From positions 72,416,001-72,480,000 of the forward strand of contig NC_059426.1 in assembly GCF_021028975.2 (NCBI RefSeq): a stretch of DNA of 64,000 nucleotides. The letters run 5' to 3'. Positions 981 through 30,700 of the stretch are shown in pieces. The position numbers and the translations under genes are program-made. Position 1 is the stretch's first letter; each line of letters starts with the position of its first letter. Below the pieces are notes generated by a model. The model was not told the DNA's origin, made no database searches, and saw only the letters and a program-made list of their open reading frames with translations. This DNA is from Sphaerodactylus townsendi (lineage: Eukaryota).

Positions 981-1181
981 ATAATATGAATTATTCCTTC
1001 AGCAGTCATAGCTCAATCTACCACACAAGAAGAGTATACAAAATGAGTGAAATCATCAGTAGTGCCCCCAGTGTTTATCACGTCTCCCAGTGTGCTCCTA
1101 TTGTATCCCCTCATCTTCCGTTCTCTTTATTTTACTGCAAATTTTATGGACTTTCCCAGGTGTCATCGAAGGCTGATTACC

Positions 1182-4100
1182 ATGGTCCAGCTCATGGTCA
1201 CTCCTGAAATATCACTTGCTGACTCACCAGTGTGGATTCGAGCCGTTGGCCTGACCCCCTCCCAGCCAGTGACCCTGCATTCATCACTGATAGATGAGAA
1301 GAATGTGAAGTTTGAAGCCAGGGCCTTCTACTGGGCAAATGAGGCCGGAGAAATAGATGTGAAAAAGGCATCTGCTGTGGGTGGTGACTACACAGGTGTA
1401 TGTCCCATGGGCCTGTTCTGGTCCCTGAAGCCAGAGAAGATGTTCCACAGATTGATTAAACGTGATGTAATAGGCAGCCCCTTCCATGTCCAGATCAATC
1501 TTTTTGGCTCTTTTGTTATGATGCCTTCGGAAAAAGATACACCACTGGCTACTTGCACTATTGAGAGGTGGTTTGTGACCCCTGGAGTGGAACAAATCAA
1601 GATCAAGGATGGTCAAGTTCGAGGATCCCTTTTCATGCCTCCAGGTAAAGAAACAGTATTTTGTTGTTGTTTTCCTTCTCTCCCCATCCCTGCCCTAGTC
1701 TTTTGGCTAAAATGGTGAATGGCCCAGGGATATATTTACAGAAAATGTTGCCTAGGACGAGCACTGAAATTGCCCCTCCCCCCAACATCTGACACCCATA
1801 TTTTAGACAACTGTACCAGAATATCAGCTCAAAAATGTAACTCAATCTCCTTAACCTTTTAATTGGGTTGAAAGAGTGAAATGCATTTTAGGCAAAGTTT
1901 TACTGTCTCCAAATGAATAGTATGAAAGTTTTTATACAAAAGTATTCAAATCATTAGAGAACATTAAATCTAGTGTAAATGCATATAAAATATTTTTCAA
2001 GGCTGTTTTTGTTTTGTTTAAATGTGACTTTGTCCAAGTTAATATGTGATAATGTATACAATATACTGGTGGATACACTAATGTTTTCAATGGTATGAAG
2101 TTTAACTCTATACTCAAATATGTTACTAGTTCTATTGTAACTATATGAGACCAAATCACATGCTTTCATTCAGATCCATTCTATGTGCTTTTGGCCCACA
2201 GACACATTGAGACAGGTGCAGAGCCGTAGCACCAATGGTGGGAGGGGGCCTAATGCCCTGGGCACACACCGGGGTGGGCAGGGCTGAAAAGTTCCAGGGC
2301 AGGGATGTGCACATGCCGCAGGTGCAGTTCCCCCTCGCTTCGCCCCTGGACAAGTTGGATGCAAAATGATTGTACAATATAAAGAAGGGTCTTCCTGTAC
2401 TGGGCCAGGTACTGTAAAGAAGATATTCCCTCTGGCTAGTAAATTGCCTCTGATCATGGAAGCTCCAGCAAGCTATGCCTGTCCTCCACACTTTGTCACA
2501 TTGCATACTGAACACAAATCAACTCAGCCCTTATTCCAAAAATGTATGAATTTGGTTGGGCTTACTGGCTCTTTTCTTGAACTGTAAAAGTAAATATCTG
2601 TGCAAATGGAAATGCTGGTACTACACTAGATCTAAATAGGGGCCCTGCATGCTTAGGAACCGAGTTCTCAGCAGGGAACATGCAACTCATGACTGATTCA
2701 AAGACACAGTTAATCACCTACCATAAGTCAGTGATGACGAACAATTGACGCGTGTCAAAGCTGACATACCATGATGTTTTGGGTGACACGCCAGCGTTCA
2801 CCAACACCCAACAACAACTATTCTCCCTGTTTGAATCATTTTTATAATTATTTGACATTTCTATATATAATACATAGCGCTACACATGATTTGACTATAC
2901 ATTTTAAAAAAATTAATGAATATGTCAAGAATTGTTTCTCTTTTGGGAGGTGACACATCAACAAAGTTAGGCATTTTCCAAATTTTTGATACACCGAACC
3001 CAAAAGATTTGCCATCACTGACCTAAGGATTTTGTAATGTACAATGAGGGTCTGAGAATCTGTTTTGAGTGAAATTGGAAATAAGTTTACTGACAGCAAT
3101 AATGCAGATGTCTGTGACAGAAAATTAGTAGACTCAAGTAGTCAGAATAATCCCTCCCACTCATTCAGTAACATCTCATCACTAGGAAGTCCGTTAAAAG
3201 GAGCCAAATTTTTCAAACGGCCACATGCCATGCAACCTACTGCACTCAAAAGGATAGGCCTGACAGGCAGAACAAGGGGATAAAGCCGTTCTAGTTATTT
3301 ATTCACGTAGCTCCAGAAGTAGAACTGGATCCTGAGATAGGGTCCAACTAGGGTTTCCAGTTTCTGGGTGCTGCCTGCAGTTCTCCTAGAATTGCAGTTG
3401 ATCTCCAGACTACAGAGGCCAGTTCCTGAGGAGGAAATGGCAACTTTGGAGGGGGAACTCTATGGCATCACATCCCCACTGAACTCTCTCCCCGTTGTGT
3501 TTGAGTAAACAAGCATTTCCCCCTTCAGCTAGTATAGCAGTTTTCTTCATGAAGTATATAATAAGAGTTGGTATGATTTTGTTTACTGCTGGATCTTCTG
3601 CCAAGGCAGGACAAACGGTAGCTAGTCTTGTGTCAGAAGGGTGGATGCGGTGGGGAGAGACAAACTGAAAGAGGCCTCACATATATCATCCGTTCTCTAT
3701 GGAAGTCTTTTTGTTAAGTTGCAGCTCTTCACCTATGCCTCTTCTCTACTGCTCTGCCTGCCTCCAGGGCCTGGCCCATTTCCAGGAGTGATTGATATGT
3801 TTGGTGGCGGTGGAGGGCTCATTAAGTTCCGGGCTAGTCTGTTAGCCAGCAAAGGCTTCGCTGTTCTGGCTCTGGCCTACATGGCATACGAGGATCTGCC
3901 CCAGACCTTGGCGGAAGTGAACCTGGAGTATTTTGAGGAAGCTGCCAAGTTGCTCTTAAAACACCCTAAGGTAGGGTTTAAGGAGGGTATGTCTTTTTGT
4001 GTGTATAACTACAAAGTACAACAAATTATTTTCCGGTTCTACAGCAATATAAATTTCCCTTGTTGGTTTCGTGACACCTTTTACAGGAGAAGTTGAAAAG

Positions 4101-7100
4101 AAGGCTGTGGGATTAGCAGCTGAACATACTGAGGTGGAAAGGGCAACACCCCCCCCCGCCCCCCCGCCCCCCCCCATGTAAGGTTCCAGTCCAATCAGCC
4201 CATATATACGCAAGAGTTAAGTTCCTAGCATGAAACTTGCAGTGCATGTCTGATCATAAGAAACCAGGGAGGATGTAGGGGAAATATCGCATGTAATTTT
4301 GACTGCTGACCAGAACAATGTAAGAAAGAGGACAGTCTTCATGTGGACACATCATTATGACTTTTAAAAAGTATTTTATTTGAAATTACCCAAAGGCTAG
4401 AGATCAACTATAATTTTTACAGAGTTGCAGGCTATACCTCATACCACTTGTGCCTCTGCTAAACAGGTGTCATTTCAAAAGTCTACAATACCTGTTTCGC
4501 TGGAATACCCGACTTTAAAAGTCTGCAATACCTGACAATGAGGACCCAACTACATATTATGCCCGCGTTTGGAGATCCATGCTGGGCCACAGGGGCCATT
4601 CAGATTGAGAACAGGGTGCACATGGTGCTTCGGCCCCTTCCCCATCTGGTTTCCCAGAAAAGCCTCAATTTGCCCACTGGAGAAACTTAAATGTATTGCT
4701 GGTGATGTGTCAGTTTCCCCAAGAGGACAAACACCAACCATTTCAATAGCAGTTTGGGACTATTTCAGGCTGGGAAAATGGGAGTGGAGGGAGTGAAACC
4801 CATTCTCCTTGTATTCTGTAGTCCCAATCCAAATTAGGTCTGTGCCTGAGAATTATTCCCAGTATAATGTGTGAACTGGCATATTTAATGCGGTTGTCAC
4901 CTCATGATTAGGAAATTCTTTGAGATTTGGGGACTCAACCTGACTCTGTCTGCAGATATTATATGCAAAAAAATCTAAAAACTTCCCCCCAAAAAATCTA
5001 AAAACGTCCCCAAAATTGATGCATGCTCTTTAATCCCCCACCCCGCCAAACTGAACATCTCTGCATATGCACTCACATGGCATCTCCCTGGTATCTCGGG
5101 GGGGGGGGGGGGCTGCGTCAATTGCAGTGGCTCCTGGGGACCCTGGAGTTGGTTACAGGATTTCCTGATGTAGCTGCCACAGCTCTTGACAAGCAGCAGT
5201 TTGCAGGGACTCTGTCACAGTGGCTGCTCCTCTCAAAGCAGGGAAAAAGAAGAGGGAGAATTCTCTGGAGGGAGAGAAAGAGAAAACTGGGGATTGTCTG
5301 CAGGAGACTGAAACTGAGAAAGCATGATGCTAAGATGTGGGGGGAAGATGGGAGACATTTTCTGAGCAGGTCTGGAGGGTACAAGCGGGGTGATTGACAT
5401 ACAAGGGGTGAGGAGAGAAGGGGGTAAGAAAAGATTGATAGAAAAGGGAGTGGAGGAAAGACTGACATAGGGGGATAGGGGGAGAAGGCTGATGAGCAGA
5501 GAGAGGGGGAAATTTGACAGAAAAGGGGGCAAGAGGGAAGGAAAAAAGAGTGGGGGAATGCCCCCCTCCACAAGTTTCTTATGGTTCCTACTTGTTTTAT
5601 ATTCTAACGCAAAGTTGGCCACATCTTTGGATGCTTAAACCTAGTGACTGGAGCTGTGAATTCTACAGATTCTACAAATCTGAAAACAGCCCCAACTTTG
5701 CAGAAAAAAGTGAAATCTGAAAAAAGAAGTTTTTAAATGAAAATGATACAAGAAGCACCTGTCGTTTCAAGCAACGGATTCTCTCAGTGGCTAGGTTTTA
5801 GTGAGTAAAGGGCAGAGGCCAAGAGGAGGGTTTTTTTCAGCCTAGTTTGGCTTTTGAAGGAGTATTCATTGGGCCCAGGCCTGTTGGGCTGCTAGCTCCA
5901 GGTTGGGAAATTCCTGGAGATTTTGTGATTGAGTCTGAGGAAGTCAGGGTTTGAGGAGAGGCCTAAGCCGAATATAATACGTAGAGTCCATCCTCCAAAA
6001 CGGTCATATTCTGTAGGGGGACAGATTAATGTTGTCTGGAGTTCACTTGTAATTCTGGGAGATCTCCAGGTCACACCTGGCTATAGGCCTGGCAGCAACT
6101 TCTGTGTGACTTGATACCACCCAATTTGCATGACTCAACTAGACCTGGCTGCTTGCTACTATTCAGCAGCAGCCACTCTATGAAAGCCAGTGTGGTGAAG
6201 TAATTAGAGCTTCAGAGCGGGATCTGGGTTAGATCAGAATCCCAGTCTTGCCAAGTCCAGTCCTTCCCATGATGTTGCCTCCTGGCTGTTGTATTAAGAG
6301 GTTGTCTGTCTCTGAACATGAAAGTTCCCTTTAACTGCCATGGCTAATAGCCACTGATACATCTATCCTCCAGGAATCTATCCAATCTCCTTTTAAAGCT
6401 CTCTATAACAGTGGCCATCACCACATCCTTTGACAAAGAATTCCACATTTTACTCACTTGCTATGTAAAGAAGTATTTCATTTTGTCAATCCTACATAGA
6501 CAGGAAGGGAGAAAATACCACTGAAATTGTTGCTGTGGCCACCCTTAGTAAAATAGAGTTGGAAGGTACACAAGACAGCAAGACTGACAATACTAAAAGG
6601 ATTAAAAAACACGCCTGATATTTAATTCCCTTACCATTTTCAAAGGTTTTTTTCCAAATTCAAGGAGAAAATGATACTGTAGGGAGAAAGACTCTTTAAC
6701 TACTTATTTCTCTGTGGTGTTCCTGAGAAAAACATCACTCCCTAAATACTGCTTACTACCCTGGGCTTGAATACAAGGATTTAATTTACATGAGAGCACA
6801 TTTTAAAAAATCACCCACCTACAGCCGGAAGTCACCAATTCTGTCACTTTCACATGACACACAGAATCTAAGACAGTGTTGGCGAACCTTTGGCACTCCA
6901 GATGTTATGGACTACAATTCCCACCAGCCCCTGCCAGCATGGCCAATTGGCCATGCTGGCAGGGGCTGATGGGAATTGTAGTCCATAACATCTGGAGTGC
7001 CAAAGGTTCGCCACCACGGACCTAAGATATCCATTTGTGTATTTGCTAGCAGTAAAGCCCATTGTATGAACAAATACAACAGGTTCTAGAAAACTGTTGG

Positions 7101-9520
7101 TGGGTTAACGGTGCCCACTGAGAGGGCCTGCCACTCCCATGTTTCTTCCTGCTTTGGTCCTCCGTCACCATCTCCCTTCTCGTCCTCCTCTTCCTGGATG
7201 CCTGCACTAGTTAATCTTTAAAATATCACAAAGCAATTTTGATTTGCCTCAGGCTAACCAGTTTTTCCCTAAAGTGAAGCTAGAACAAGAGTCCCTGGAA
7301 AAGATAATAATGCTGCATGTTAAGTGCTGTCAAGTTGCTTCCAGCTCATGGTGACTCTATGAATCAATGTCATCCAAAACATCCAATCATGAACAGATCT
7401 TGCAAATTAACACTACTGCTAAGAAAAGTTGAAAGCGGCAGGAAAAGAGGAAGGCCCAATATGAGATGTATTAACTCAGTCCAGGAAGCCACAAACCCTC
7501 AGCTGGCAAGAGCTGATCAATAGGGCGTTCTGGAGATTTTTAATTCATAGGGTTACTGTAAGTTGGAAGCAACCTCTCTTGACCACCCTTAACACACACA
7601 CACCTTGAGCAAAATAGACCTTGAGCAAAATAGATCCACTGGAGAAGGGTCTGCATAAATGACTGAATGACATTTTACTGGAGGAAAAGTAACTTAAGTT
7701 GGAGGAAAGTTCCTAAGGCTTAGAGAGAGGCTTCATGGAAGTCACGCCCCTTCCTCTGTGGAGCTCAGTGTTAGGCAACAGCTACTTCGGAGCTTGAATT
7801 TGGTCCCCTGTTCCTTATTCACATCTCCTATTTCCTTATTTGTGAGTCTATAGCCGTACTGAGGATAACTGCACAAACTGGAAATGAGCATTTGCCTCCT
7901 CAGCTCATTATTGTTGTTGTTGACTACCATCCTTTTCCCAGCCAGTCCCTTTGCCCTCAATTTTGCCCAGGCATTCTTTGGGGTCTTCCCACCGAACCTT
8001 ATCCTGGTTAGGCCTTTCAGGCCACCATTTCCCTGGCAATGGGAGAAGCCTGCAGGCCGTTCCCACAGCCGTTGCCTCCACAGTCACTGTGGCAGGAGGG
8101 AAAGTGGTTGCTGGGATTCCCAGACTCTTTCCTCATTGCAGTGAGCTGGGGAAAGAAGTGCCAAGAGGTCCTGGCAGGTAAGTCTCCCCTACCTTTCTTT
8201 CACTCACCATGAAAGAAAAGGTTCTGGAGTTCATGACTTTGTGGAAGTCACATCCAGTGCTCTGAAGTCTCAGCTGTGCAGAAGCTGATTGTGATTCTTC
8301 AGCAGCGAGAAACTGTTGAGAAACGTCCTTCATGTATGTTCAGAGGCACTCTTTCTCTTACCCCCAGTCTCCACTCTGGTAATTAACTTTTTAATGTATC
8401 TTACTGAGAAGAGATTTTAGGATTTAAATGTAGCCCAGTGGACCCCTTTTAGCCACAGTATTCTTTAAAAGCATTGTTGAAGGGCATTTTCTCACCTCCC
8501 TACTGCTCAAAATGCCCAAGGTACCTTGACCTGGATGATCCAAGCTAGCCCTCTCTCATTAGATCTCAGAAGTTAAGGAGTCTGCTGTGTATACAGCAAG
8601 TAACAGCAGAATTCCACTGTTTTGTTTGTTTTGGGGTTTACTGGTTCTGTGTAAGCCACACCCCCAAGCCATGTGTACGTGGTGATTGGCTGAAATGAGT
8701 CATGTGTGGAGATTGGCTGGAAGTGAAACGTCTCCACCTTCTACGTTTGTTCAATTATATATAGAGATTTTTATTTTACAAAATTTATATCCTATCTTTC
8801 TGACTTCACAGGATCCACCAGGATCAGGGTATAAGAATCTTTCTCATAATAATCTGTGTTCAAATGTAGCTCTTAAGTCACTGATGCAGTAATTGTATTA
8901 ACTTTATGAGTTTTTTTCCACAGGTTAGAGGCCCAGGACTTGGGGTAATTGGAGTCTCCAAAGGATCTGAGATTGCACTAGCCATGGCTTCCTTCTTAGT
9001 GCAAATAGTTGCAGCAGTCTGTATCAATGGTACCACAACTGTAAATGATGCGCCACTCCGCTTTAGGGATATTTATATCCCTGGTGTCTGCTACTACCCA
9101 GAAAAGTTTCTCATAAACAGCATGGGAGCACTGGACGGCCATGAAATCATTGGAGATCCTCGGGATGAGGCACACCAAGCGTCTGTCATCCCTTTGGAAA
9201 AGGCCCACGGGTCCGTACTCTTTGTGGTGGGAGAAGATGACCGTGGCTTCAACAGCAAGTTGTTTGCTGAGCTGGCCATAGCCAGAGCGAAGAAGTATGG
9301 GAAAAATAATTGTACTTTGCTGTCTTATCCAAAGGCTGGACATCTCATAGAACCTCCTTGTTCTCCACTGTGTACTTGCTCCTGGATCCCAGGTTATATG
9401 AAACCTACACAATGGGGAGGTGAAATGGAACCTCATGCCCAAGCCCAAGAGCACTCCTGGAAGGAGATCCAAAAATTCCTTGAGCTTCACCTTGGTCCAG
9501 CTGGAAGCAGCAATGTGTGA
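1182..9520 (+). CDS. BAAT/ACNAT-like acyl-CoA:amino acid N-acyltransferase (type-I acyl-CoA thioesterase superfamily), 420 aa; coding exons 1182-1644, 3768-3970, 8924-9520
   Basis: Three exons join in frame (phases 1,0) with GT-AG sites. MVQLMVTP...[20 protein letters not shown]...KRDV and [32 protein letters not shown] resemble BAAT/ACNAT more than ACOT1. Triad: Ser in GVSKG (TCC 8957-8959), Asp in GEDDR, His in AGH. An acceptor at 1158-1159 implies an upstream exon. AATAAA at 9576 and 9845. Confidence 0.93.
2729..3020. mobile_element. Non-autonomous hAT element (CAGTGATG TIR family)
   Basis: CAGTGATGACGAAC ... TTTGCCATCACTG termini, internal (G)TGACAC motifs, degenerate 8-bp TSD ccataagt/acctaagg. 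Confidence 0.75.
3349..3492. mobile_element. Copy of an abundant TAGGGTTGCCA-terminated non-autonomous element family
   Basis: Shares the CTCCAGG...GATCTCCAGAC...TTTGGAGGG core with copies near 5884-6098, 12890-13000, 19909-20040, 20231-20418, 23350-23548, 23634-23854, 32191-32368, 32417-32628, 38387-38589 and 38688-38899. Confidence 0.65.
6235..6490 (-). mobile_element. CR1-like LINE 3' fragment
   Basis: aatctatccaatctccttttaaag...gtggccatcaccacatcc...gaattccaca resembles a reversed CR1 3' end and the plus-strand piece at about 30960-31170. Confidence 0.55.
6874..7019. mobile_element. Palindromic hAT-type MITE (146 bp)
   Basis: Near-perfect inverted repeat centred on GGCCAATTGGCC; TSD atctaaga/acctaaga. 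Confidence 0.9.
7286..7602 (+). mobile_element. RTE-like LINE 3' end with a nested inverted copy of an RTE tail
   Basis: SLEKIIM...[16 protein letters not shown]-terminal motif and CA tail; about 7316-7410 is the reverse complement of a similar tail. Confidence 0.6.
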
Positions 9521-10786: not shown

Positions 10787-10933
10787 CAGGGGTAGGGAAC
10801 CTGCGGCTCTCCAGATGTTCAGGAACTACAATTCCCATCAGCCCCTACCAGCATGGCCAAATGCCATGCTGGTAGGGGCTGATGGGAATTGTAGTTCCTG
10901 AACATCTGGAGAGCCGCAGGTTCCCTACCCCTG
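10787..10933. mobile_element. Palindromic hAT MITE, CAGGGGTAGGGAACC family
   Basis: Whole-element inverted repeat; perfect TSD tgctagca. Confidence 0.95.
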
Positions 10934-11141
10934 TGCTAGCAGAATGTTTAGACACTGGGTTTTCTACAGAAGAAGCCTCACATACTATCCAAGAGCTTAA
11001 TTTATTTCTGGGAATGATTACCAACTGAAGCTTGGCATGCAGGCAAATTCCAGCAAATGTATCACAGTATGAACTGGACAGATTTGCAATAAATGGTACC
11101 TGCAACCACACCTCACAGAAGCATGTCGTATATATTTAGAG

Positions 11142-13168: not shown

Positions 13169-14755
13169 AAGAAAAGGAAGGGCAAGGGTAACACTTAAGC
13201 TTTGTTTCAGCTGTTTTTAGACTTCTGGTCGGTTATCCTACCCTAATCCTATTTCATTGTTTATTGATGCCCTATCTGTGGATTGTATTGATTCACTCTG
13301 TGTAATCTGCCTTGAGTTCAAGTGAGAAAGGTGGCAATAAATAGCATAAAGTTGTCCCTCCAGCTCCTCCCCTGCAATGACATTTAACAGAATTCTGTGT
13401 TTTCACTTTTTGGTCCACTAGATGCTGCTGAAGAGCTGATTTTCAAGTAGTCACACAGTTAGCATTAGCAATCTTCAAAAGACTGCTAGATCAAGAGCAC
13501 TGGCTGTGCCTGGACATAAGCTTTGAAATAACCAAAGGTTTCACGTTATATCAGTTATGTTTTTGCACAGCTGGTGATCTAAAATAAGGAACAATTCTTA
13601 ATATTAGCAGACTAATCAATACTACTGCCTTTATTGAGAATAAAAAGCAAGGAAAGATCTTATTGCTATTCTCAGTGCAGAGGTGCAAGCAGTGTTTCAA
13701 CATCAGCCTTCCAAGCATTTCATCATGTATTATGCACCTTTGCCCTTTTTCTCATTCCACTTTCCCTCCTCAGATTGTTACTCCAAGCCTTCTAATCTTC
13801 CCTCATTCCTTTGCAGCTGTGGTCCCAATCCTTAACAAGTCTGGGACCAGATTCTCATGTACCACTAAAAGCATTTTTCAGCTCCATTCCCACCATCTGT
13901 TTGCAAAAGGAGTTTCAAATGCAGGTGTAGGTTTTCTCATGCATGGAAAACAGGGTATTTTAATTGGGTATTTTTCAGTGATTGGCGATCAAATAGGAAG
14001 CTTGATTTGTAGTCACATTTCAGTCTTCCTGCACTTTACAGTGCATGTGTGATTGGAAGGGAAAGTATCTACAGGGAATGTGTGTGAGCAACTGTCGATT
14101 GTTGATGAGTCCCTGAACTTTAAATGGCATGAATTGGTATCTCTACATTCACACAATAGCTGGAGTTCAGGCTCCAGCCCTTGAAGGTATCTGATGATAT
14201 TGTGGGCTCACAGGTTTTCTCTCTCAGAAGTTCTTATTCCTAAATTGATGCTGCATTTATTTTCAGATGAGTTCAGGACAGCCTTTGTTTCAAATTTTAA
14301 GTTTCAAGTTTCAAATTGTTCCAGCTGTCTTCATTGGATCACAGAGATGGGGCTACAATGGCTGCCACGTACTGAAAACAGTGAGGGGCTTCTCTGCACC
14401 AGTAGGGCCACCAGAAGCCACTTACTTATCCTGAAATATGTTTTCCCCTTAATACAAATCCTATGAGCATGCTGTACCAAATAAAAGAGAAACCTTACTT
14501 TTACCTTCAGTCGTGTACCTGTTGGGTCACTTTTCCAGTATGCTATGGTTAAACCTGCAAGTGGGATTATAGTCAGGACATTTGAAGTTGTGAGGATAAC
14601 ATCCATCTAGAATAGTAAAGTTGATTCTAAAGATCAAAGCATAATGCAGAGTCCTGGAGAAAGGGAAGAAGCTCATGCTAAAAAAACTTGGTATCTTGGC
14701 GCACTAATAAAGAAACCAAGCATCTTTTATTGATTCCCAAGATATGCTTCTAGGC

Positions 14756-14918
14756 CAGGGGTAGGGAACCTGCGGCTCTCCAGATGTTCAGGAACTACAA
14801 TTCCCATCAGCCTCTGTCAGCATGGCCAATTGGTGAGACTTCAATTGGCCATGCTGGTAGGGGCTGATGGGAATTGTAGTTCCTGAACATCTGGAGAGCC
14901 GCAGGTTCCCTACCCCTG
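14756..14918. mobile_element. Palindromic hAT MITE, CAGGGGTAGGGAACC family, with 15 extra bp at its apex
   Basis: Perfect TSD ttctaggc; otherwise matches the copy at 25429-25576. Confidence 0.95.
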
Positions 14919-15359
14919 TTCTAGGCCAATCTTGCCCGTCTGGTGCCAACATTCTCACTGAGATGATAAGAACTGTATGTGTATATAGAGGACGGGGTAG
15001 TGATTGCTGTGGTCATTGCAGAGGACCTTTCTTCAGGTTGTACAGCTTCCTTAGGGGGGGAAAAACTGTAAATCTTGATCGGGTAGTTTCAGCATGAGTA
15101 ACAAATACATCAGAAGGCTGAAAGGGGCATTGTCATAATATTGTAATGTGATGTCTTTTCCGGGATAGCCATTACCCTTTGAAAGTCCGGGGAGAGAAAC
15201 TGACAAGAAATGGCCATGTTGCAGCTACTCATAATGCCAATGTGATATACCCTAAGTAAGAACACATTCCAACACCAGATGCATATTGTGTGCTGTGTGC
15301 AGTCTGGCCTGGTACACCCAGTGCCTCAGTTCTATCCTTCAATATAGGGCAGTTACATC

Positions 15360-15624
15360 AGGGTCCCCTCATATTGAGGGGTCCTGCCATCCCCCCTCAT
15401 GGGGGTAGATTTTAAATTGGGGTCGGACGCCTTTTATTATGTATTATGGTTTTTTGCTGTTTTATGAGTTTTAAGCTATTTTATGGATTACTATTAATGT
15501 TTGTTACCGCTGTTTTAAAGATTTTAGTGACTTGTTTTACCATGTTTTATGCTGTACACCGCCCAGAGCCCCTAGAGGATGGGGCGGTATAAAAGTTTAA
15601 TAAATAAATAAATAAATAAATAAA
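15360..15624 (+). mobile_element. LINE (L2-like) 3' end with (TAAA)n tail, at the end of ZP1 pseudo-exon 3
   Basis: T-rich UTR, ...ccgcccagagccc...ggggcggtataaa stem-loop and TAAA repeats. Confidence 0.65.
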
Positions 15625-17039
15625 CATGAGCATGTGAATTGTTAGTAGGTCTTCATCAGGTCTTTAATAAGATTGCCGAGCAGCAGCTGGCAACTGGCAA
15701 AGAGTTAGGCGGGGTATGAGCGGGGGCACCATCAGTGCATCACATTACATCATTTCTGGGGTTAGCCGTTAAGTGACATCATGCTCCCTAGGAATCATAG
15801 GAAACACTGTGAAGCATGACATCACTTCCATGGAAAACCCAGCAAAAACAGTGATTATGTTTTTTAGTTAACTCCCACTGGCAAATGGCAGTGGGCAGCA
15901 GTAGAGGTTACTGGTGAGACTTCAATAAATAATCAGTGCCAGCATTGTAAATGTTCAAGAAACATGAGGAATTAAGCAGAGCCTTGGATTCTGGGCTCTT
16001 ATGTGTCAGTAAGGTGATCGCACAGTGCAAAATGGAGCATGATTTGAATGATTCTAAGTGTTAGTCTCAAGTATTTGCTCTTCATGAAGTGAAGTAAACT
16101 GTATTTTGTTGTCACTTATTATTGAATACAATTTCTCAATGTAGCTGTTTTGTTGGGAGAACTGGGCTGCTTTTGTGGAGATTTGGACTGGTATGATGAA
16201 CAGAATTTAACAATGGTCTAAATTGTTAGCTTTTACAACTGAATAGCTGATCTTTCTCTTAAGGTTGAAGGTGTATTGTGAGAGTGTACCATTCTAACTT
16301 CCTGATACTCCTGTCTCTTCTTTTGCAATCTCAGCTTCCCCTTTAACACTGGAGCAATGCCAGGTTTCATCTGGGAAGGTCCCCTGTGCAGATGCTTGTT
16401 ACCAGGCAGGATGCTGTTATAATGAAGGGGACCAAACTGCTCCATGTTACTATGGCAACGCAGGTACTTTCAACTCCTTAGAGCTTTCCATTAATTTTCT
16501 CAGTTTCTGCCTGAAAATTTGGCTCTGATACAGGCCGTCACTGCTGTGATTCATTTTAGCAACAGATGAAGCTTCAGACTACATGTTTGGCTATTCTTTT
16601 GTTTGATACAAAGCTATGCAACCTATATTCACACTCTTAATATATTCTCAAAATACTTGAAAATCAGCTTTTGAAATGTGGCTAGTCAACCTGGGTCACC
16701 TTAATGTGATCAAACAGACTATTTCACCATTGCATTCCAAACTCCAGTAGTCCCTTCCTCTTCAAATCACAAAATCTATGGGCTAGAGCTAGATCTTAAA
16801 AGTATGCTTGTCTAGATTTAGCCTTACTAGCAGTTGGCTAGATGTTTGGCTGAAAACTCAAACAGTTGAGTATTTGCCACCCTTCACAATTCTGTCATTT
16901 TGTATTCTCAACTAAACTTTCAGCTGAATGTTTGTCCTTGGGTTAAGTTTGTGGGGTTAGTAATTAGCTAGGGCAGATTTTAGGAGGGGATGGGACCTTT
17001 AATTCAACTTAGAGAGCCCAGTATGGAGTCAGGGATCCC

Positions 17040-19340: not shown

Positions 19341-19512
19341 GACTCCATCTTACTGGAGTCTGTTTCTTCTTACTGGCATCCCAATTGTCCCCCTTCCTCC
19401 CCTGTCCCAATAGTTAAGAACTGGATGTGCAAACAGGATGGGAATTATAAATGTCTTCAGGCTATGTAGGGGTCCTATGCATACCCATTTATTCACCATC
19501 AATATTGTCATA

Positions 19513-21778: not shown

Positions 21779-24700
21779 ATGGTGTCAAGCTGCAGTTATT
21801 ATGTAGCCTTAACACTACTGTTTCTAGGTAGCTTGTCCTATGGACAATATGGTATCCAGAGTGTTAGTTTTTTAGTTTTACCTCATAGATATGACTGTGG
21901 AGAACACAATATGCAATTATTAGTTCATCCTAAGCCAAGCCATTCTGTCCGCTTTAAAGTTGTGGGTAAGTGTCTCTTATTTACTTCTCTCTTATTTAAT
22001 AAAACAGAGTTAAAAGAAGAGTATCTTTTTATCTCAATATAGAAAACCTTCACCTTCTGAACCACTGGGGTTTGCTCTGTTCAACAGCTTATAGACATAA
22101 GCATTTATGAATAGACTGCCAACTATATTCTACTTGGTGCTGGCAAATATTCTAGGATTTATGAGTAACTAGCGTGGCCCGGCCATGCATTGCTGTGGCT
22201 TATTGGGGTGAAATGGGAAAGGAACAAAAGCAGCAAATCAATTGCAGAGGCCAGCAGTACGTGCTCATGCAAACACGCAGCCTGATACTGTGCGATGTCA
22301 GTGATGTGTGTGCCTGCATTCCTTGGGGGGGTGGGGATGGAAAGGCACCCCTCCCACACGTCTAGGCTGGCTGGTCATGATCCTTTACCTGGGAGTAAGT
22401 TTGGTTGGTGGCAATGGATGTTGCTTCCGAGGAAACCCTTTGAGGGGCGTGACGCAGCCATTCAAAGTATGTCACAGTTGCTGTACCAAGCTTACTCCTG
22501 AGTAATGCTAGTTTTCTTAACTGTAACTGCAGTATTCAGGGAATCTAGGGTGCCTGGGCCCTCCCTCCTGTCCCTTGCATGTCGCCCCTCACTCTCTTCC
22601 CTCCCGCACTTCTCTTCCCTGGCATGCCACCCCTCTCCCTCCTTCCCTTCCCTTTTCCTACGCTAGGGTGGTTGGGTCATATCAAGATGCTGGGCCCCCT
22701 CCCTTGCATGCCACCCCTCACTGTCTCCCCTCTCTCACTTCTCTTCCCTTGCCTGCCTCCTCCTCTGTCCCTTCCCTCTCCCTCCCTCCCTTCCCTCTCC
22801 CTTGTGTGTATGTGTGTGTGTTTCACTTCCAATTGAGTTACTGCCTATGTACTGTTTCCACTGCTCATATTTGGCCACCTCAGCGAACATTCTAAACTGC
22901 ACGAACATTCTAAGGGTGACAGTTACACACAGGCAGCTGCATGTCCTTCACCATGGAGCGCCAGGAAAAAGGCGTTTTACCTGGGCCAGGTGTGAAATTT
23001 CAGGTATGTGAACATCTAAAAACACTCTCACCTGGCTGACTACAGTGGCTGGGAATTTTCAGAGAAGTTGGCCCAGCAGTTACTGAGTTATACTACCACT
23101 AACAAAAACACTGTTAGCTTTTTATATATATAGATAGATTGATGCTATACTAAAGAAAGACCGGTTCCTTCATAAAATAAATAAATAAAACACAAATGCT
23201 CAATTTGAAGTCATTAGCTATAGTAAGGTATCTGAGTAGTTTAGCAACAAACTGAAAGCAAAGGGAAGAGGCTGTGCACAAAAACAGAACTTTCCTTATA
23301 GCAAAAATAGTTCTCCCTGAAAACCAATGTTTCCCTGGGAGTGAAAGTGGAGATGCCAGTCTCCAGGTGGGACCTGGGTATCTCCTAAAATTACAGCTCC
23401 TTCGCAGAATACAGAGATCAGTGTCGCAGAAGAAAATCAGTGTTTTGGAGGGTGGACTTTCTGGTTTTGTACCTCACTGAGGTCCCTGTTTTCTCCTGGC
23501 TTAATCCTCACATCTCAAAGAGTGTCCCAACCTGGATCTGGCAACTCTGCTCCCCTATTACTTGCCAGTGACTATGGGGGATCTGACAATCCTAAGTGGA
23601 AAAGTTGTTTGTCTCACTTACCTCAGCTGGGTATACGGTTGCCAACCTCCTGGAAGCACTGGAGATTTCCCACTATTAGAGCTGATCTCCAGACAATCAA
23701 AATCAGTACTCCTGGGGGGAAAGGCTGCTTTGGAGGGTGGGCTTTGTGTGGCCTTTACACCCTGCTGAGGTCCCTCCCCTTCCCAAACCTTGCCCTCCCC
23801 AGGCTCCACTGCCAAAATCTCCAGTTATTTCCTGATCCAGAGCCGGGAACCCTAGAGCCTGGGTCTACTTCACTGTCTTCCCACTTAAACATTATCTCTG
23901 CAGTGGTATGGTAAAGTCTTTTTCTTGCTGTTGGTGTGAGCCAGGTCTATTGTTATTTTTATCAGAGCTTTAGAGGCCTATTTTGGAGAACCAGTTTTTT
24001 ATACTTTGATCATGATGAGACTGTAACAAACTTTAAAAAAATTATAGAAGTCTCTGTGTGTGTGTGTGTGAGAGAGAGCATGTGACACTGTCTACTCTGG
24101 AAACTTGTTCTCAAATCCATATAAGGGAGGTTTCTTCAGTTTGCATCTAAAATTCTAAAGTTTCAATCAATGTGAATTAATGACAAATGTAAATGATCTA
24201 AACTTAAACTTAGTATAATACAAAGGGAGGTAACAGGTTTCTGTGTCTATTCTGTTTTAATTGAATGATCAGTGACTGCTTGTAAATTGGAATTGCCTGA
24301 GAAAATTAGCAATTTCTGCAAGACATAAATTTTTACTGAAGTTTTTTTTTTAAATTCTAGGAATGACCTTTTAGCTTATGGATAAACCTGATTATTGGTT
24401 GAGGTGTCCGTACTGTAAACTCATCTGTGTTGCTTCCAAAAGTGAGAACACCCATAGATGGGGCATCTGTTGATTGCCTGCTTTACTTATGGGCTGCATT
24501 TCTTTGCTGAGACTCAAGGCAGATTACAGAATGAGAAAACAGTGCAAGAATTTTTAAAGAACTGCCTTCAATTTTCAGACGTTTGAGTCATGCCAATGTT
24601 ATAAAATGTTCTCCAGAACAATTCTGTGTACAAAATTTATTTCCTTTATGCAAAATGTGGGAACCTTCCTGACCTCACGAGGCAGCTCATTCCACCAGGT

Positions 24701-27700
24701 GGGAACCACAACAGAGAATGCATGCGTGTGGGCAATTGTTCATTGTATCCCTTTGCAGGGTGACTCTTTCAGGAGAGGCAGTTCTGCAAATACAGGGCTC
24801 CAAAGCCATGAAAGATTGTATAAGTAATAACCAATAACTTGAACTGAACCTGGGAACAAATTAGTAACCAATGGAGAGACTGTAGAATAGGTGTAATATG
24901 CATACTCTACCTAATTCCATACAGCAATTAAACTGCGGCATTCTTTACCAGCTGGAGTTTCTGAATTGTTTATTTTTTCATTCAAATTCTAAACCACACC
25001 TCTGCTTTCGGGCTCAGGGCTGTTAAAGGTCACACTCTTGTCTTAAAGGGCATAGTCATGTTGACTGTATTACAATGGTCTAGCCTTGAGATTACCATGG
25101 CATGAGCTCACATGGCCAAGTCAAGTTAGGCAGCCACCTTCCAGTTTATATGAAGATGAAAGTATTCTTTTAGCTGCATTAACTTGCTTGTCCACCAGTA
25201 AGCCTGGGTTCTTAACTGTATAAGTGAGACTCAGCTGAACTCCATCTAATATAGAAAGCATGATACCCTCACCACAACAATGTTGGGAAGTCTGAATAAA
25301 GAAATATAGTTGAGTGTAACCAGTGATCTTCAAAGCAGGGTAAGTTCACATAGAATAAGCAAACTAGTTGGCAGGCAAACTAATAAAGAGGGAAAGTCAA
25401 GGGCAAGTTACTTCTGGATTTGCTAGAGCAGGGGTAGGGAACCTGCGGCTCTCCAGATGTTCAGGAACTACAATTCCCATCAGCCTCTGTCAGCATGGCC
25501 AATTGGCCATGCTGGTAGGGGCTGATGGGAATTGTAGTTCCTGAACATCTGGAGAGCCGCAGGTTCCCTACCCCTGTGCTAGAGAGACTTGATTTCTTTC
25601 TGTAAACTTCAGAGCTGGCTCTAGCTATGGAAATGGTAAGTGAATCTTAATGACTGCTTCGGGATGAGTACCATAACATCTAATGGGCTGATCCACATTG
25701 TTGTATTCTACTTAAATTATTAAACACTGTTCACGAACAGTAAAATATCTGATTGTAATTATCTGCAGATGAATTTGGAAAAATCTTTGAAGTTACAAAT
25801 TGTTCAAGCTGCCTTCATTGGGTAACAGTCAGTGAAGATGGAGCAGTATTTTCTGCTGGGTACCAGGGTTGCCATGTGTATCACAAGGTAAGGTCCAACT
25901 GCTCTGAGCCTTGCTGGCCAGGAATAGAAAGGTAACGGGCAGTACAGAGAAAACACAGGCGAGTGTAAGTTCATAGACTTTGAGGCAGGGGGTTGCTAAT
26001 TGAAATGTAGGGACTTTCAATCTAGTTTCATAGATAATTATTGTTGAACAAATAATCACAAACTCCAGACATTAAATCTGCCACTTGTACCAAAGTGTCC
26101 CCATAAGAGAAATGTGTAGCTGTATTTTTTATCTTTTTTTGCTAAAAAAATCTGTGTCCAATTTGAGTCAGTTGCAACTTCCTATGTTGAAATGTCACTG
26201 CAATAAAGTTTTCTGTCAACGAACCCTGTAGGCACTGCAGCTATATCCTAAATTGGAACTGACTAGCCTGCATATTTTGATCAGTGCCCCATGTATAGTA
26301 ACAACTACTTCAGAGGTTTCAAGTGGTATTATCATAACATTCTGATTTGATGAATTTTCCAGGATGGGCACAACTACCTGAAGGTTCGAGTAGAAGAACT
26401 GACAATAAATGGAAATGTTGCTGCTTTTCATGATATCAACATGGTCTGCCCTAAACCTGAAGAACAAATCTTGACACCAGAGGATGGCATGCGGCTTGGG
26501 CCCCAGCCGGTGTACCCAGGCCTGGTGCGCCCTGTACCTGCTCAGCCCCATCCTGCCCTGGTGCGGCCAGTATCTGCTCAGCCCCAACCAGGCCTGGTGC
26601 GCCCTGGGCCTGGTCAGCCCCAGCCTGGCCTAGTGAGGCCAGTGCCTGCTCAGCCCCAACCTGGTCTGGTGCACCCAGTGCCTGCTCAGCTCCAGCCTGG
26701 TCTGGTGCGCCCAGTGCCTGCTCAGCCCCAACCTGGTCTGGTGCGCCCAGTTCCTGCTCAGCCCCAGCCTGGCCTGGTGCGACCAGTTCCTGCTCAGCCC
26801 CAACCGGGCCTGGTGCGACCAGTGCCTGCTCAGCCCCAGCCTGGTCTGGTGCGCCCTGTGCCTGTTCAGCCCCAGCCTAGCCTGGTGCGACCAGTGCCTG
26901 CTCAGCCCCAACCGGGCTTGGTGCGTCCCGTGCCTGGTCAGCCCCAGCCTGATCTGGTGGGGCCAGTGCCTGCTCAGCCCCAACCAGGCCTGGTGCGCCC
27001 TGTGCCTGCTCAGCCCCAACCCGGTCTGGTGCGCCCAGTGCCTGCTCAGCCCCAGCCTGGCCTGGTGCACCCTGTGCCTGCTCAGCCCCAACCCGGTCTG
27101 GTGCGCCCAGTGCCTGCTCAGCCCCGGCCTGGCCTGGTGAGGCCAGTGCCTGCTCAGCCCCAGCCTGATCTGGTGCGACCAGTGCCTGCTCAGCCCCAAC
27201 CGGGCCTGGTGCGCCCAGTACCTGCTCAGTCCCAGCCTGGCCTGGTGCGACCAGTGCCTGCTGAGCCCCAACCGGGCCTGGTGCGCCCCATGCCTGGTCA
27301 GCTCCAGCCTGATCTGGTGAGGCCAGTGCCTGCTGAGCCCCAACCAGGCCTGGTGCGCCCTGTGCCTGCTCAGCCCCAACCCGGTCTGGTGCGCCCAGAG
27401 CCTGCTCAGCCCCAGCCTGGCCTGGCGAGGCCAGTGCCTGCTCAGCCCCAGCCTGGTCTGGTGCGCCCAGTACCTGCTCAGCCCCACCCTGGTCTGGTGC
27501 ACCCAGTACCTGCTCAGCCCCAGCCTGGTCTGGTGCGACCAGTGCCTGGTCAGCCCCAACCGGGCTTGGTGCATCCCGTGCCTGGTCAGCCCCAACCTGA
27601 TCTGGTGCGCCCTGTGCCTGCTCAGCCCCAACCTGGTCTGGTGCGCCCTGTGCCTGCTCAGCCCCAACCGGCCGTGGTGCGCCCTGTGCCTGGTCAGCCC

Positions 27701-30700
27701 CAACCTGGTCTGGTGCGGCCAGTGCCTGCTCAGCCCCAACCGGACCTGGTGCGCCCTGTGCCTGGTCAGCCCCAACCTGGTCTGGTGCGACCAGTGCCTG
27801 CTCAGCCCCAACCAGGCTTGGTGCGTCCTGTGCCTGCTCAGCCCCAACCTGGTCTGGTGCACCCAGTACCTGCTCACTCCCAACCAGGCCTGGTGCACCC
27901 TGTGCCTGGTCAGCCCCAGCCTGCCCTGGTGCGCCCTCTGCCTGCTCAGCCTCAACCAGGCCTGGTGCGCCCTCTGCCTGCTCAGCCTCAGCCGCCGCAG
28001 CCGGGGCTGGTTCACCCAGTGCCTGGTCAGCCCCAACCTGGTCTGGTTCGCCCAGTGCCTGGTCAGCCCCAGCCTGGCCTGGTGCGCCCTGTGCCTGCTC
28101 AGCCCCAACCTGCCCTGGTGCACCCAGTACCTGCTCACTCCCAACCAGGCCTGGTGCACCCTGTGCCTGGTCAGCCCCAGCCTGCCCTGGTTCGCCCTCT
28201 GCCTGCTCAGCCTCAACCAGGCCTGGTGCGCCCTCCGCCTGTTCAGCCTCAGCCGCCGCAGCCGGGCCTGGTTCACCCAGTGCCTGGTCAGCCCCAACCT
28301 GGTCTGGTTCGCCCAGTGCCTGGTCAGCCCCAGCCTGGCCTGGTGCGCCCTGTGCCTGCTCAGCCCCAACCCGGTCTGGTGCGCCCTGTGACTGCTCAGC
28401 CCCAGCTGCCCCAGTCTGGCCTGGTGCACCCAGTGGCTCCTCCACCCCAGCCTGGATTTGTGCGCCCAGTGCCTGCTCAGCCCCAGCCACCGCAGCCTGA
28501 CCTGGTGCGCCCATGGTCTCAGCTCTATCCTCTAATATACAACATAGGTAAGTGCAATATACAACATAGGTATGTGAACTTCCAGTATATGATAATTATT
28601 GCTAGCCTTTCAAATGCTCTACTTGCATAAGTTAGTTACCTCATTTAGCACAGCTTTGAATTCAGCATGCACTGGTTGTATTGCTGTCAACTGCAGATTC
28701 GTTTTCTTGAAATGTGCCTCTAATTTTTTTCACATATTTTAACAGCTCTACATAAATTTTGAGCCAGAATGCTGTATTGGTTAAGATGTCAGACTGGGGC
28801 CTTGGAAACCCAGGTTCAGTTCCCCATTCCGCCATGGAAACTGGCTCTTAGCCTTGGCCTGGCTAGTATTTGGATGGGAGACCTCCAAGGAAAACCAGGG
28901 TTGTGACACAGAGGCAGGCAATGGCAAATCACCTCTGAAAATCTCTTCCTTAAAAACCTTTTGGGGCCACCATAAGTCAGCTGTGACTTGAAAGCAATGC
29001 AAAACTCCACATTTATACCACAGCGACATATTAGTATGTTTTTATAACTATATCAGTGGCTACTACCAATGTTGACATTTTGAATTACCCTTGAAATATT
29101 TTGTAACATAGTGACATAAGTATTCCAGCAAGTAGTCAGAAATGGATTAAAGCTAATAAATATTAACTTATTCTTAGATGGATCTTTTTCATCTCTGCCA
29201 CAATCTTTTCAAATGTCTTCGTTGTCCTGGAGCAGAGGTTGTTCTCCATTGTCCATCTTGCTGCTCTGCGTCATTATAAAATGTGATGTTCTGCCATAAC
29301 TGTTCAGCAGCTGATGTCTGATGGCTGCATACCTCTGTCAGTCAATATTTGATGCCTATCAAAAATAATGAAGAGGGTGCCATACATACTTTTCTTAAAT
29401 TGTTTTTGGCTGCTAATAGAGGATTCAATAGGAAGCTGGCCATTGCATTAGCACAGTGTTCTGTGTGCTGTATAATGTATGCCCAAACAATGCAGGTGAA
29501 GGTACCATACACAAATTCAGCACCAAGGTGCTTATGCTTGCTCCCTCAAATGAATGAAGTGATGGTATGCTTTTCTTTTGGGTTCTTGCAGGCACACATT
29601 TAACAATGGAACAATGTCGAGTTCTGAGCAGGAAAATCCCCTGTGCAGATACCTATGATCAAGCAACTTGCCATCAAGCTAGGTGCTGCTATGATGACAG
29701 TGACTTTAGTACCCCTTGTTACTATGGAAACACAGGTAAAATCTGACATTTGATTGGTGAACAGAATTCCTTATACTGTTGTGATAGTTCTTGAACAATC
29801 TGGTGCTGCATTTGTGAATGTGTCGAATATGTTAACTTTGGGGAGCAGGATGATGCAACTGTACTACAGAATGTTACACGTTTTGCTGAAATGGCTGGGC
29901 CATCTCCCAGAGGGTGAATGGATAATGCAGACACTGTAGTTGTTATCACTCTGTCACTGAGAGCTGTTCTATGATCCTTTTGCTCCTTACAGTCACTGTT
30001 CAGTGCCTTACGGATGGCCACTTCATCCTGGTTGTCTCTAGGGACATGTTGGACTACCCAGTTGACCTTGACACTGTTAAGTTATCTTATGCCCAAGCAG
30101 GGTGTGACCCTGTCAGGAGAACAGAGGCTTTCCTTGTCTTCCGCTTCCCCCTGACTCAGTGTGGCACAACAGTACAGGTGAGAATGCCTCCACTTTTAAG
30201 CAAGGGAAAATGCTCAGAGTTGAAATTGTTGTGTAGTTGAATATACATTTTATCTTTTCTGTCTTTCCTAGCTGATTGCTGACAAACTAATTTATGAAAA
30301 TCAACTGATCTCTGGCATTGATATCCAAGATGGGCCAGATGGATCCATCACCCGAGACAGCACATTCATGTAAGTTTCTAATATGATACATTTGAAGCTG
30401 CCAACAGACTTGAGTGTGGGGAAAATGGCCTGGCCTCTTTCTCTCCCTCTAATGGCTGATAGGAATGGTAGATGGTAGATAGGAATCACTTCATCATGGT
30501 CTGGAGATCACCACTGGATTGGATCTAAAGATTCACATGTAAAGTTTCACTTGGTAGAATATGTCAGTCTATGTTCTGCAGCCCCCATTCCAGCCAGCTG
30601 CCCCTGAATTCTGGGGACCCCTGGAAGCAGTGGTAGGAAAGCTGTAGCAGTGGTATGGCCTTTGGACTTAATAGCCTTATAGTGCCCCACCACCTCCCAA

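What the first reader, a model, noticed from the sequence alone, without database searches (positions are those of the whole stretch)
14267..16463. Fossil of an ancient second ZP1 gene that almost lacks the P/Q array
Seen: three relic exons upstream of ZP1, in the same orientation and order, matching ZP1 exons 2-4. Over the first 31 codons of exon 3 I count 29/93 nt differences (69% identity), 10 of them synonymous, and I could not align the introns. Inference: this was an old paralogue under purifying selection before it died, not a recent dead-on-arrival copy. Its exon 3 runs from the ZP-N1 end to the exon-terminal motif (QFYPSI vs QLYPLI) in about 185 nt with a single QSGLVHPVP unit, against 2185 nt and 55 units in the live gene. 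This hints at a former two-gene egg-coat system: a short repeat-poor ZP1 beside a repeat-rich one. Lesions: exon 2 frameshift, exon 3 acceptor AG>GG, Cys>Tyr, TAA at 15257. I found no clear ZP-module exons.
Basis: partly seen in the sequence, partly recalled or inferred. Interest (0 to 1): 0.8.

Follow-up and report, generated by a model that had tools for sequence, protein, structure and literature searches.

The report
Dead copy of the standard squamate ZP1
Upstream of a gecko's working egg-coat gene ZP1 lie three decayed exons of a second, very old ZP1 gene that was once functional; it turns out to be the gecko counterpart of the ZP1 that other lizards and snakes still use, while the working gecko gene is a more divergent sister copy.

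Summary

The core interpretation is supported and can be sharpened. The relic ("type A") lies at the same place in Gekko japonicus, Paroedura picta and Eublepharis macularius, each decayed differently. Euleptes europaea has an annotated, uninterrupted 580-aa "ZP1-like" protein of this type with about five P/Q units.

Relic versus live gene gives dS about 1.3 and dN/dS 0.19. Between species, type A copies give 0.31-0.42, all below 1. So this was a long-lived, constrained gene that died separately in several geckos.

In the trees, type A groups with the single ZP1 of non-gecko squamates (99/99). The live gecko gene ("type B") is their sister. A gecko-only duplication is rejected (AU p 0.015).

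The "repeat-poor versus repeat-rich" idea is only partly right. Gecko type A arrays are short, but array length varies widely in both lineages.

No RNA evidence could be obtained.

The parts
14267..14380 (+). Relic exon 2 of type A ZP1 (middle of the ZP-N1 domain). The CAG acceptor and GT donor are kept. It carries an 18-nt tandem insertion and a net 26-nt deletion (frameshift).
   Evidence: Alignment A2; tblastn to P0064 residues 57-96; tblastx to live exon 2.
14749..14931 (.). Palindromic MITE-like repeat inserted in relic intron 2. It is not part of the gene.
   Evidence: Matches 25417-25583 on both strands at 86-90%. Further copies lie at 10770-10960 and 6877-7033.
15164..15352 (+). Relic exon 3 (end of ZP-N1, one P/Q unit, exon-terminal motif). 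Lesions: acceptor AG>GG at 15162-15163, Cys>Tyr, TAA at 15257-15259, a frame offset before the unit at 15300-15326, TAG at 15345-15347, and an unclear donor.
   Evidence: Alignment A3; tblastn; translation; sequence read.
15300..15326 (+). The single surviving P/Q unit. It matches the 36-nt unit of the live array at up to 93%.
   Evidence: blastn hits to many array units; tblastx.
16335..16463 (+). Relic exon 4 (trefoil domain). The frame is open, AG and GT are kept and all six cysteines are kept, but 5-6 residues are deleted between Cys2 and Cys3.
   Evidence: Alignment A1; 74% identity to P0064 residues 212-265, E 1.5e-19; protein alignment.
21779..37094 (+). Live ZP1 (type B), given as context. 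Exon 1 at about 21779-21964, exon 2 at 25768-25887, exon 3 at about 26354-28550 with about 54 P/Q units, exon 4 at 29591-29734, ZP module and tail to 37091.
   Evidence: ORFs and TRF; tblastn with P0001 and P0002; exon translations all open.
1047..9520 (+). Upstream neighbour: a BAAT/acyl-CoA thioesterase-like gene. The same neighbour lies upstream of ZP1 in python and horned lizard.
   Evidence: tblastx to L005 and L006; gene tables.

Best explanation
The stretch is an unprocessed (intron-bearing) pseudogene: what remains of the upstream member of an old tandem pair of ZP1 genes. I call the upstream gene type A and the live downstream gene type B.

**Shown**
- The pair lies between a BAAT-like gene and PRPF19.
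- Type A occurs at the same place in five gecko genomes or annotations.
- Type A was a complete gene: ZP-N1, a short P/Q linker, trefoil, ZP module and a membrane anchor.
- Type A evolved under purifying selection.
- In protein trees type A groups with the only ZP1 of iguanians, monitors and snakes. Type B branches off before that group but after tuatara.

**Inferred**
- The duplication happened in the squamate stem.
- Non-gecko squamates kept A and lost B.
- Geckos kept both for a long time. Then A decayed separately in several gecko lineages, including this one, leaving B as the sole ZP1.
- In this window the relic has no coding function. It lacks exon 1 and the whole ZP module, and it carries stops, frameshifts and a lost splice acceptor.
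For: **The relic and its lesions:**

**Position.** The window is colinear, introns and intergenic DNA included, with Gekko L001, Paroedura L002 and Eublepharis L003.

**State of type A in each species.**
- Gekko: exons 1-4 plus a fused ZP-module remnant at L001 23136-23247.
- Paroedura: exon 1 and exon 4 only.
- Eublepharis: exons 2-4, with a stop in the trefoil exon, plus four ZP-module exons.
- Euleptes: P0064 has all four Pfam domains of ZP1.

**Selection.**
- A vs B: dN/dS 0.17-0.23, dS 1.1-1.6.
- A vs A between species: 0.31 (CI 0.17-0.60), 0.42 (0.21-0.95), 0.31 (0.17-0.57).
- B vs B between species: 0.18-0.23.

**Trees.**
- Squamates 100/98.
- Type A, including the window relic, 98/98.
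- A plus non-gecko squamates 99/99.
- Type B, including the live gene, 100/100.
- The AU test rejects an A+B clade: delta lnL 22.4, p 0.015.

**Shared derived motifs of A and non-gecko ZP1**, where B and the outgroups keep the older state:
- VSSG..QGPAAC in the trefoil.
- VSGIDIL in ZP-N.
- CSVSVC, and the tail ending WKK..SRTTKL.

**Other squamates.** Monitor (L004) and python (L005) have one ZP1 and no relic in the whole interval to PRPF19.
Against: - The A-plus-non-gecko grouping rests largely on the C-terminal quarter of the protein. Without it the squamate node is a polytomy.
- Type B has a long stem branch (0.22-0.23), so long-branch effects cannot be fully excluded.
- Gene conversion between A and B does occur (Eublepharis, 97% over 430 nt) and could distort trees.
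- The relic contributes only about 110 codons.
- The Euleptes protein is a computer model. It lacks the exon with the furin site and external hydrophobic patch, and its DNA could not be fetched.
- No type B fossil is securely identified outside geckos.
- No RNA data could be laid.
Confidence: 0.8

Rival explanations
1. The duplication is gecko-specific. A and B are sister copies made after geckos split from other squamates. B then evolved fast, and A merely looks like other squamates' ZP1 because it changed little.
For: Without the C-terminal region the tree leaves A, B and non-gecko ZP1 unresolved. B has a long stem branch. No secure B fossil was found outside geckos.
Against: The AU test rejects A+B monophyly (p 0.015). 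Several independent derived motifs are shared by A and non-gecko ZP1, while B keeps the states seen in turtles and tuatara; this needs reversals or convergence under the rival. dS between A and B is about three times the between-family gecko dS.
Confidence: 0.13
2. It is a partial segmental duplication of ZP1 exons 2-4 that never made a protein (dead on arrival). The exons are recognisable only because the live partner is conserved.
For: Only exons 2-4 are present in this window, and the introns do not align to the live gene.
Against: Orthologous copies in other geckos hold exon 1, ZP-module exons and a C-terminal exon. Euleptes has an uninterrupted full-length model. dN/dS against the live gene is 0.19, and 0.3-0.4 among type A copies, all with bootstrap intervals below 1.
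Confidence: 0.02
3. The relic exons are still used, for example as extra 5' exons of the live ZP1 transcript (as in the NCBI Gekko model P0001) or as a non-coding or regulatory element. The well-kept exon 4 is the most likely candidate.
For: Exon 4 keeps its AG, its GT and an open frame. It and its flanks are about 80% identical among four geckos. The Gekko model splices type A exons 1-3 onto type B.
Against: In the window, exons 2 and 3 have stops, frameshifts and a lost acceptor. The flanks of exon 4 are as conserved as the exon, and that level equals the local synonymous divergence (dS 0.16-0.35), so nothing beyond a locally slow neutral rate is needed. The Gekko model is an automatic prediction, and no transcript evidence was obtained.
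Confidence: 0.04
4. The relic is a remnant of ZP4 or another ZPB-type gene rather than of ZP1.
For: ZP4 has the same domain order and a short linker without a P/Q array.
Against: The relic and its full-length orthologue fall inside the squamate ZP1 clade, with amphibian ZP4-like proteins as outgroup. The relic carries a P/Q unit of the ZP1 array type. It lies at the ZP1 locus next to PRPF19.
Confidence: 0.01

Closest known systems
ZP1 of non-gecko squamates (Anolis H9GPQ6, Phrynosoma, Pogona, Varanus, Liasis, Pseudonaja)
   Same: The relic's lineage is their orthologue by tree (99/99), by shared derived motifs and by position between a BAAT-like gene and PRPF19.
   Different: Here it is dead and reduced to three exons. 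Gecko copies have 1 to about 6 P/Q units, against ZP-N1-to-trefoil spacers of about 120-690 residues in those species. Gecko type A also shares a one-codon deletion after the last ZP-N1 cysteine.
Euleptes europaea 'ZP1-like' XP_056707976.1 (P0064)
   Same: It is the closest full-length relative: 74% identity in the trefoil exon and 56-69% in the ZP-N1 pieces. It is in the same clade (98/98) and has a short array.
   Different: It is annotated as uninterrupted, with ZP-N1, trefoil, ZP-N and ZP-C. The model lacks the furin-site/EHP exon.
Chicken ZP1 and its solved ZP-N1 cross-link domain (PDB 6GF6, 6GF7, 6GF8)
   Same: Same family and domain order. The type A ZP-N1 matches 6GF6 at E 1e-40. Chicken ZP1 also has a repeat region between ZP-N1 and the trefoil (PMC4475693).
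   Different: It is a different sauropsid lineage, a live gene, and its repeat units are unrelated.
Tandem ZP1/4 duplicates in alligators (Feng et al. 2018, PMC6262864), and the ZP1-like copies annotated in turtles and tuatara
   Same: Tandem ZP1 copies at the same locus, some fused by gene predictors.
   Different: In the trees these duplications are separate from the squamate A/B split. Those copies are annotated as intact.
Lineage-specific loss of ZP1 or ZP4 in mammals (for example the mouse Zp4 pseudogene; reviewed in PMC7848090 and PMC8005149)
   Same: One of two related ZPB-type egg-coat genes decays while the other carries on. Which one is lost differs between lineages.
   Different: There the pair is ZP1/ZP4 on different chromosomes and dates from the tetrapod stem. 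Here it is a younger tandem ZP1/ZP1 pair.

Membership tests
ZP1 (ZP1/ZP4 or ZPB subfamily of egg-coat proteins) | N-terminal ZP-N1 Ig-like domain (Pfam PF22821) | tested here: met
   Relic exons 2 and 3 align to residues 57-136 of P0064, whose residues 34-127 hit PF22821 at E 6e-35. The fragments alone are too short and damaged to hit Pfam. The first third of the domain (exon 1) is missing.
ZP1 (ZP1/ZP4 or ZPB subfamily of egg-coat proteins) | Trefoil (P-type) domain before the ZP module | tested here: met
   Exon 4 is 74% identical to the P0064 trefoil (E 1.5e-19). All six cysteines are kept, but the Cys2-Cys3 loop is shortened by 5-6 residues. It gives no Pfam hit on its own.
ZP1 (ZP1/ZP4 or ZPB subfamily of egg-coat proteins) | ZP module (ZP-N plus ZP-C), furin site and membrane anchor | tested here: not met
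   No such exons lie between 16470 and 21700 or elsewhere upstream. They are present in the orthologues of Eublepharis, Gekko (remnant) and Euleptes.
ZP1 (ZP1/ZP4 or ZPB subfamily of egg-coat proteins) | Signal peptide, exon 1 and an open reading frame | tested here: not met
   Exon 1 was not found. There are two stops, two frame breaks and a lost acceptor.
ZP1 clade rather than ZP4 | Groups with ZP1 in a tree and lies at the ZP1 locus next to PRPF19 | tested here: met
   Trees. Synteny. No amniote ZP4 was in the panel; amphibian ZP4-like proteins and platypus ZP1 served as outgroups.
Unprocessed (duplicated-gene) pseudogene | Keeps introns and the exon order of the parent gene, has disabling lesions, and has orthologous copies elsewhere | tested here: met
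   Exons 2-4 are separated by introns of 0.8 and 1.0 kb that align to the Gekko, Paroedura and Eublepharis relics. Lesions as listed above.
Expressed or exonised pseudogene | Transcripts covering the relic exons | not testable with these tools

The most novel reading that the evidence does not exclude
Squamates began with two tandem ZP1 genes and then sorted them reciprocally: geckos build their egg coat with paralogue B, and all other lizards and snakes with paralogue A. Geckos are caught in the act, with A still annotated as intact in Euleptes but lost separately in at least three or four other lineages. A bolder version is that the tandem ZP1 pairs of tuatara, turtles, crocodilians and squamates all descend from a single sauropsid pair that is repeatedly homogenised by gene conversion, as seen directly in Eublepharis. 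That bolder version I put at about 0.15 on its own.
Probability: 0.6. Interest if true: 0.55.

Novelty: new member of a known kind. Interest (0 to 1): 0.45.

Why it matters
ZP1 cross-links egg-coat filaments, and egg-coat genes are a classic case of birth, death and rapid change linked to fertilisation.

If the reading holds, "ZP1" in geckos and "ZP1" in other squamates are not the same gene. That matters for three things:
- any comparative or selection study of squamate egg coats;
- genome annotation, since the NCBI models for Gekko and Eublepharis are A/B chimeras;

The several independent, differently broken type A copies also give a natural series for dating loss of constraint.

It is not a new kind of biology. 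Loss of one of two related ZP genes is well known in mammals.

Tried and rejected
- **RNA evidence.** The look-up of sequencing runs found no holder on record as RNA; it listed three RNA runs of a close relative, added by species label.
- **DNA of orthologues.** The look-up of encoding contigs had no record for Euleptes P0064 or Pogona P0058.
- **Relic exon 1.** It was looked for with Gekko and Paroedura exon 1 DNA and by three-frame translation. Nothing was found.
- **Further type A exons.** I searched for ZP module, furin site and anchor exons in the window, Gekko and Paroedura. Only the Gekko remnant turned up.
- **Pfam on the relic pieces alone.** No hit.
- **Earlier findings of the scan.** Nothing was on record for this place or these words.
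- **Horned lizard fossil.** Its placement in the tree was rejected as unreliable (terminal branch 1.47) and the row was dropped from the final tree.
- **Extra conservation around exon 4.** I considered reading it as function. It equals the local synonymous divergence, so I rejected that.
- **Not attempted.** Complex prediction, structure prediction and Rfam were not used, because they do not bear on the question.
Full report
**What is there**

The window is from a gecko. Its gene order is:
- a BAAT/acyl-CoA-thioesterase-like gene on the + strand at 1047-9520;
- the relic at 14267-16463;
- a live ZP1 at about 21779-37094, with a 36-nt P/Q array of about 54 units;
- PRPF19 on the minus strand from about 41100.

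| Relic | Live ZP1 | Identity | E-value |
|---|---|---|---|
| 14302-14344 | 25786-25828 | 86% | 1e-6 |
| 15097-15326 | 26297-26523 | 68% | 1e-25 |
| 16315-16466 | 29570-29738 | 65% | 2e-11 |

**Lesions**

- a frameshifting net 26-nt deletion in exon 2;
- the exon 3 acceptor CAG>CGG;
- TGC>TAC at a cysteine kept in all other copies;
- TAA at 15257.

They also show more:
- an 18-nt tandem insertion in exon 2;
- a frame offset between the ZP-N1 part of exon 3 and its single P/Q unit;
- TAG at 15345-15347;
- a 5-6 residue deletion between the second and third trefoil cysteines in exon 4.

Exon 1 is gone, and so is everything from the ZP module to the 3' end. A palindromic MITE-like repeat sits in relic intron 2 at 14749-14931.

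**The relic has orthologues**

A word search with the start of live exon 3 returned two gecko ZP1 models. The Gekko japonicus model P0001 contains two tandem copies of the exon 2-3 peptide, and its first copy matches the relic better than it matches the live gene.

I then read the loci themselves: L001 for Gekko, L002 for Paroedura and L003 for Eublepharis. The same upstream copy, which I call type A, is present in all three:

| Species | Type A content |
|---|---|
| Gekko | Exons 1-4, plus the start of the first ZP-module exon fused to a late ZP-C exon (L001 23136-23247) |
| Paroedura | Exon 1 and the trefoil exon only |
| Eublepharis | Exons 2-4 (with a stop in the trefoil) plus four ZP-module exons |

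The window is colinear with these loci through the relic's introns and flanks at 67-85% identity, so the copies are positional orthologues.

The protein P0064 (Euleptes europaea "ZP1-like", XP_056707976.1, 580 aa) is the same type:
- It is 74% identical to the relic trefoil, against 54% to the live one.
- It is an uninterrupted model with ZP-N1, trefoil, ZP-N and ZP-C.
- It has about five P/Q units.
- The model lacks the exon carrying the furin site and external hydrophobic patch. Its DNA was not on record, so "intact" is provisional.

**Was type A ever functional?**

I built codon alignments of exons 2, 3 (the ZP-N1 part) and 4, dropping broken codons, and obtained these values:

| Comparison | dN | dS | dN/dS (bootstrap 95%) |
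|---|---|---|---|
| Relic vs live gene | 0.25 | 1.30 | 0.19 (0.08-0.36) |
| Window A vs Gekko A | 0.13 | 0.42 | 0.31 (0.17-0.60) |
| Window A vs Eublepharis A | 0.12 | 0.28 | 0.42 (0.21-0.95) |
| Gekko A vs Eublepharis A | 0.10 | 0.31 | 0.31 (0.17-0.57) |
| Live type B between species | 0.08-0.11 | 0.42-0.55 | 0.18-0.23 |

A copy that had been neutral since its birth would push dN towards dS, and that is not seen. Type A was therefore constrained for most of its history, including well after these gecko lineages separated.

With the different lesions in each species, this points to separate and fairly late losses. A rough parsimony count on the window's own branch gives 13 non-synonymous and 7 synonymous changes over 257 and 70 sites. 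This last figure rests on few changes.

**Which gene is it?**

The first tree used ZP-N1, trefoil and ZP module only. It put all squamate sequences together (99/99) but left type A, type B and non-gecko ZP1 unresolved.

Adding the C-terminal region changed this. Type A then groups with the single ZP1 of Anolis, Phrynosoma, Pogona, Varanus, Liasis and Pseudonaja (99/99), with type B as their sister inside squamates (98/98). Forcing A and B together costs 22.4 log-likelihood units (AU p 0.015).

I then added the window's relic and live exons and the other relics as rows. The result:
- type A, including the window relic, 98/98;
- A plus non-geckos 99/99;
- type B, including the live gene, 100/100;
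- squamates 100/98.

Simple motifs agree with the trees. A and non-gecko ZP1 share derived states in the trefoil, in ZP-N, before the furin site and in the cytoplasmic tail. B keeps the states found in turtles and tuatara.

dS between A and B is about three times that between gecko families.

So the duplication most likely predates the split between geckos and other squamates. The relic is the gecko orthologue of the "standard" squamate ZP1, and the live gene is the other paralogue.

Monitor and python show one ZP1 and nothing else across the whole interval to PRPF19. Horned lizard has degenerate ZP-module exons downstream of its ZP1, where a type B fossil would lie. They carry an ancestral/B-like motif, but I could not place them reliably.

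Caveats:
- The signal is concentrated in the C-terminal quarter of the protein.
- B has a long stem branch.
- Gene conversion between A and B is real: in Eublepharis the two copies are 97% identical over 430 nt, next to stretches at 76%.

**The P/Q array**

Gecko type A arrays are short: 1 unit here, 2 in Gekko, about 5 in Euleptes and about 6 in Eublepharis. The relic's short exon 3 is therefore mostly inherited rather than a post-mortem deletion, though a few units were probably lost.

Its non-gecko orthologues, however, have spacers of about 120-690 residues between ZP-N1 and the trefoil. Type B ranges from about 3 units in Gekko, through 24 in Paroedura, to about 54 here.

Array length is thus labile in both lineages and is not a fixed difference between the paralogues.

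**Conservation around exon 4**

Relic exon 4 and about 400 nt of its flanks are roughly 80% identical among four geckos. The flanks are as conserved as the exon, and the level matches the local dS of 0.16-0.35. I read this as a locally slow neutral rate, not as function.

**Known or new**

Full-text searches found nothing on gecko or squamate ZP1 paralogues. Feng et al. 2018 (PMC6262864) note tandem ZP1/4 duplicates in alligators. The protein searches also show multiple ZP1-like copies in turtles and tuatara. In the trees these are separate from the squamate split.

Loss of one of two related ZP genes is a known pattern, so this is a new member of a known kind. The twist is relevant to annotation: the NCBI Gekko and Eublepharis models are A/B chimeras.

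- All searches with window sequence were made exon by exon, by reference.
- Joined exon translations, with X at stops, were built only inside scripts for the codon statistics and the tree rows.
- One short exon 1 peptide was typed into a script by mistake and never used.

Noticed in passing
window 14749-14931; also 25417-25583, 10770-10960, 6877-7033; L002 12115-12282: A palindromic MITE-like element of about 180 nt occurs in several copies, in the relic intron, in the live ZP1 intron and upstream. The same family is present in Paroedura.
   Followed up: partly
L003 (Eublepharis) 18534-18959 vs 26610-27039: The type A and type B ZP-C exons, together with the intron between them, are 97% identical, while the neighbouring ZP-N exons are 76% identical. 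This is gene conversion between the tandem paralogues. The NCBI model P0006 joins A and B exons.
   Followed up: partly
L003 (Eublepharis) 19698-22677: The 5' part of type B looks rearranged. Exon 1 lies on the opposite strand (21228-21124), exon 3 has stops and the trefoil exon is frameshifted. This is either real decay of both copies or an assembly problem.
   Followed up: no
L001 (Gekko japonicus) 10001-53657: The NCBI model P0001 is a chimera of type A exons 1-3 and type B exons 2 to the end, and spans 43.6 kb. Gekko type A exon 3 also has a frame offset before its two P/Q units, caused by an indel different from the window's.
   Followed up: partly
L006 (Phrynosoma) 23880-24152 and 26632-26756: Degenerate ZP-module exons with stops lie 4-7 kb downstream of ZP1. 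They keep an ancestral/type-B-like motif rather than that of the lizard's own ZP1, so they are a candidate type B fossil in an iguanian. Their tree placement is unreliable.
   Followed up: partly
P0003, P0005, P0011-P0014, P0052, P0063-P0077: Tandem ZP1 or ZP1-like paralogues occur in turtles (several old clades), alligator (two units fused in one model, one of them sister to bird ZP1) and tuatara (two).
   Followed up: partly
window 16940-20549: About 3.6 kb between the relic and the live gene has no counterpart in the Gekko locus. The Gekko ZP-module remnant would map into a gap of about 110 nt at window 20760-20872, so that part is deleted here.
   Followed up: no
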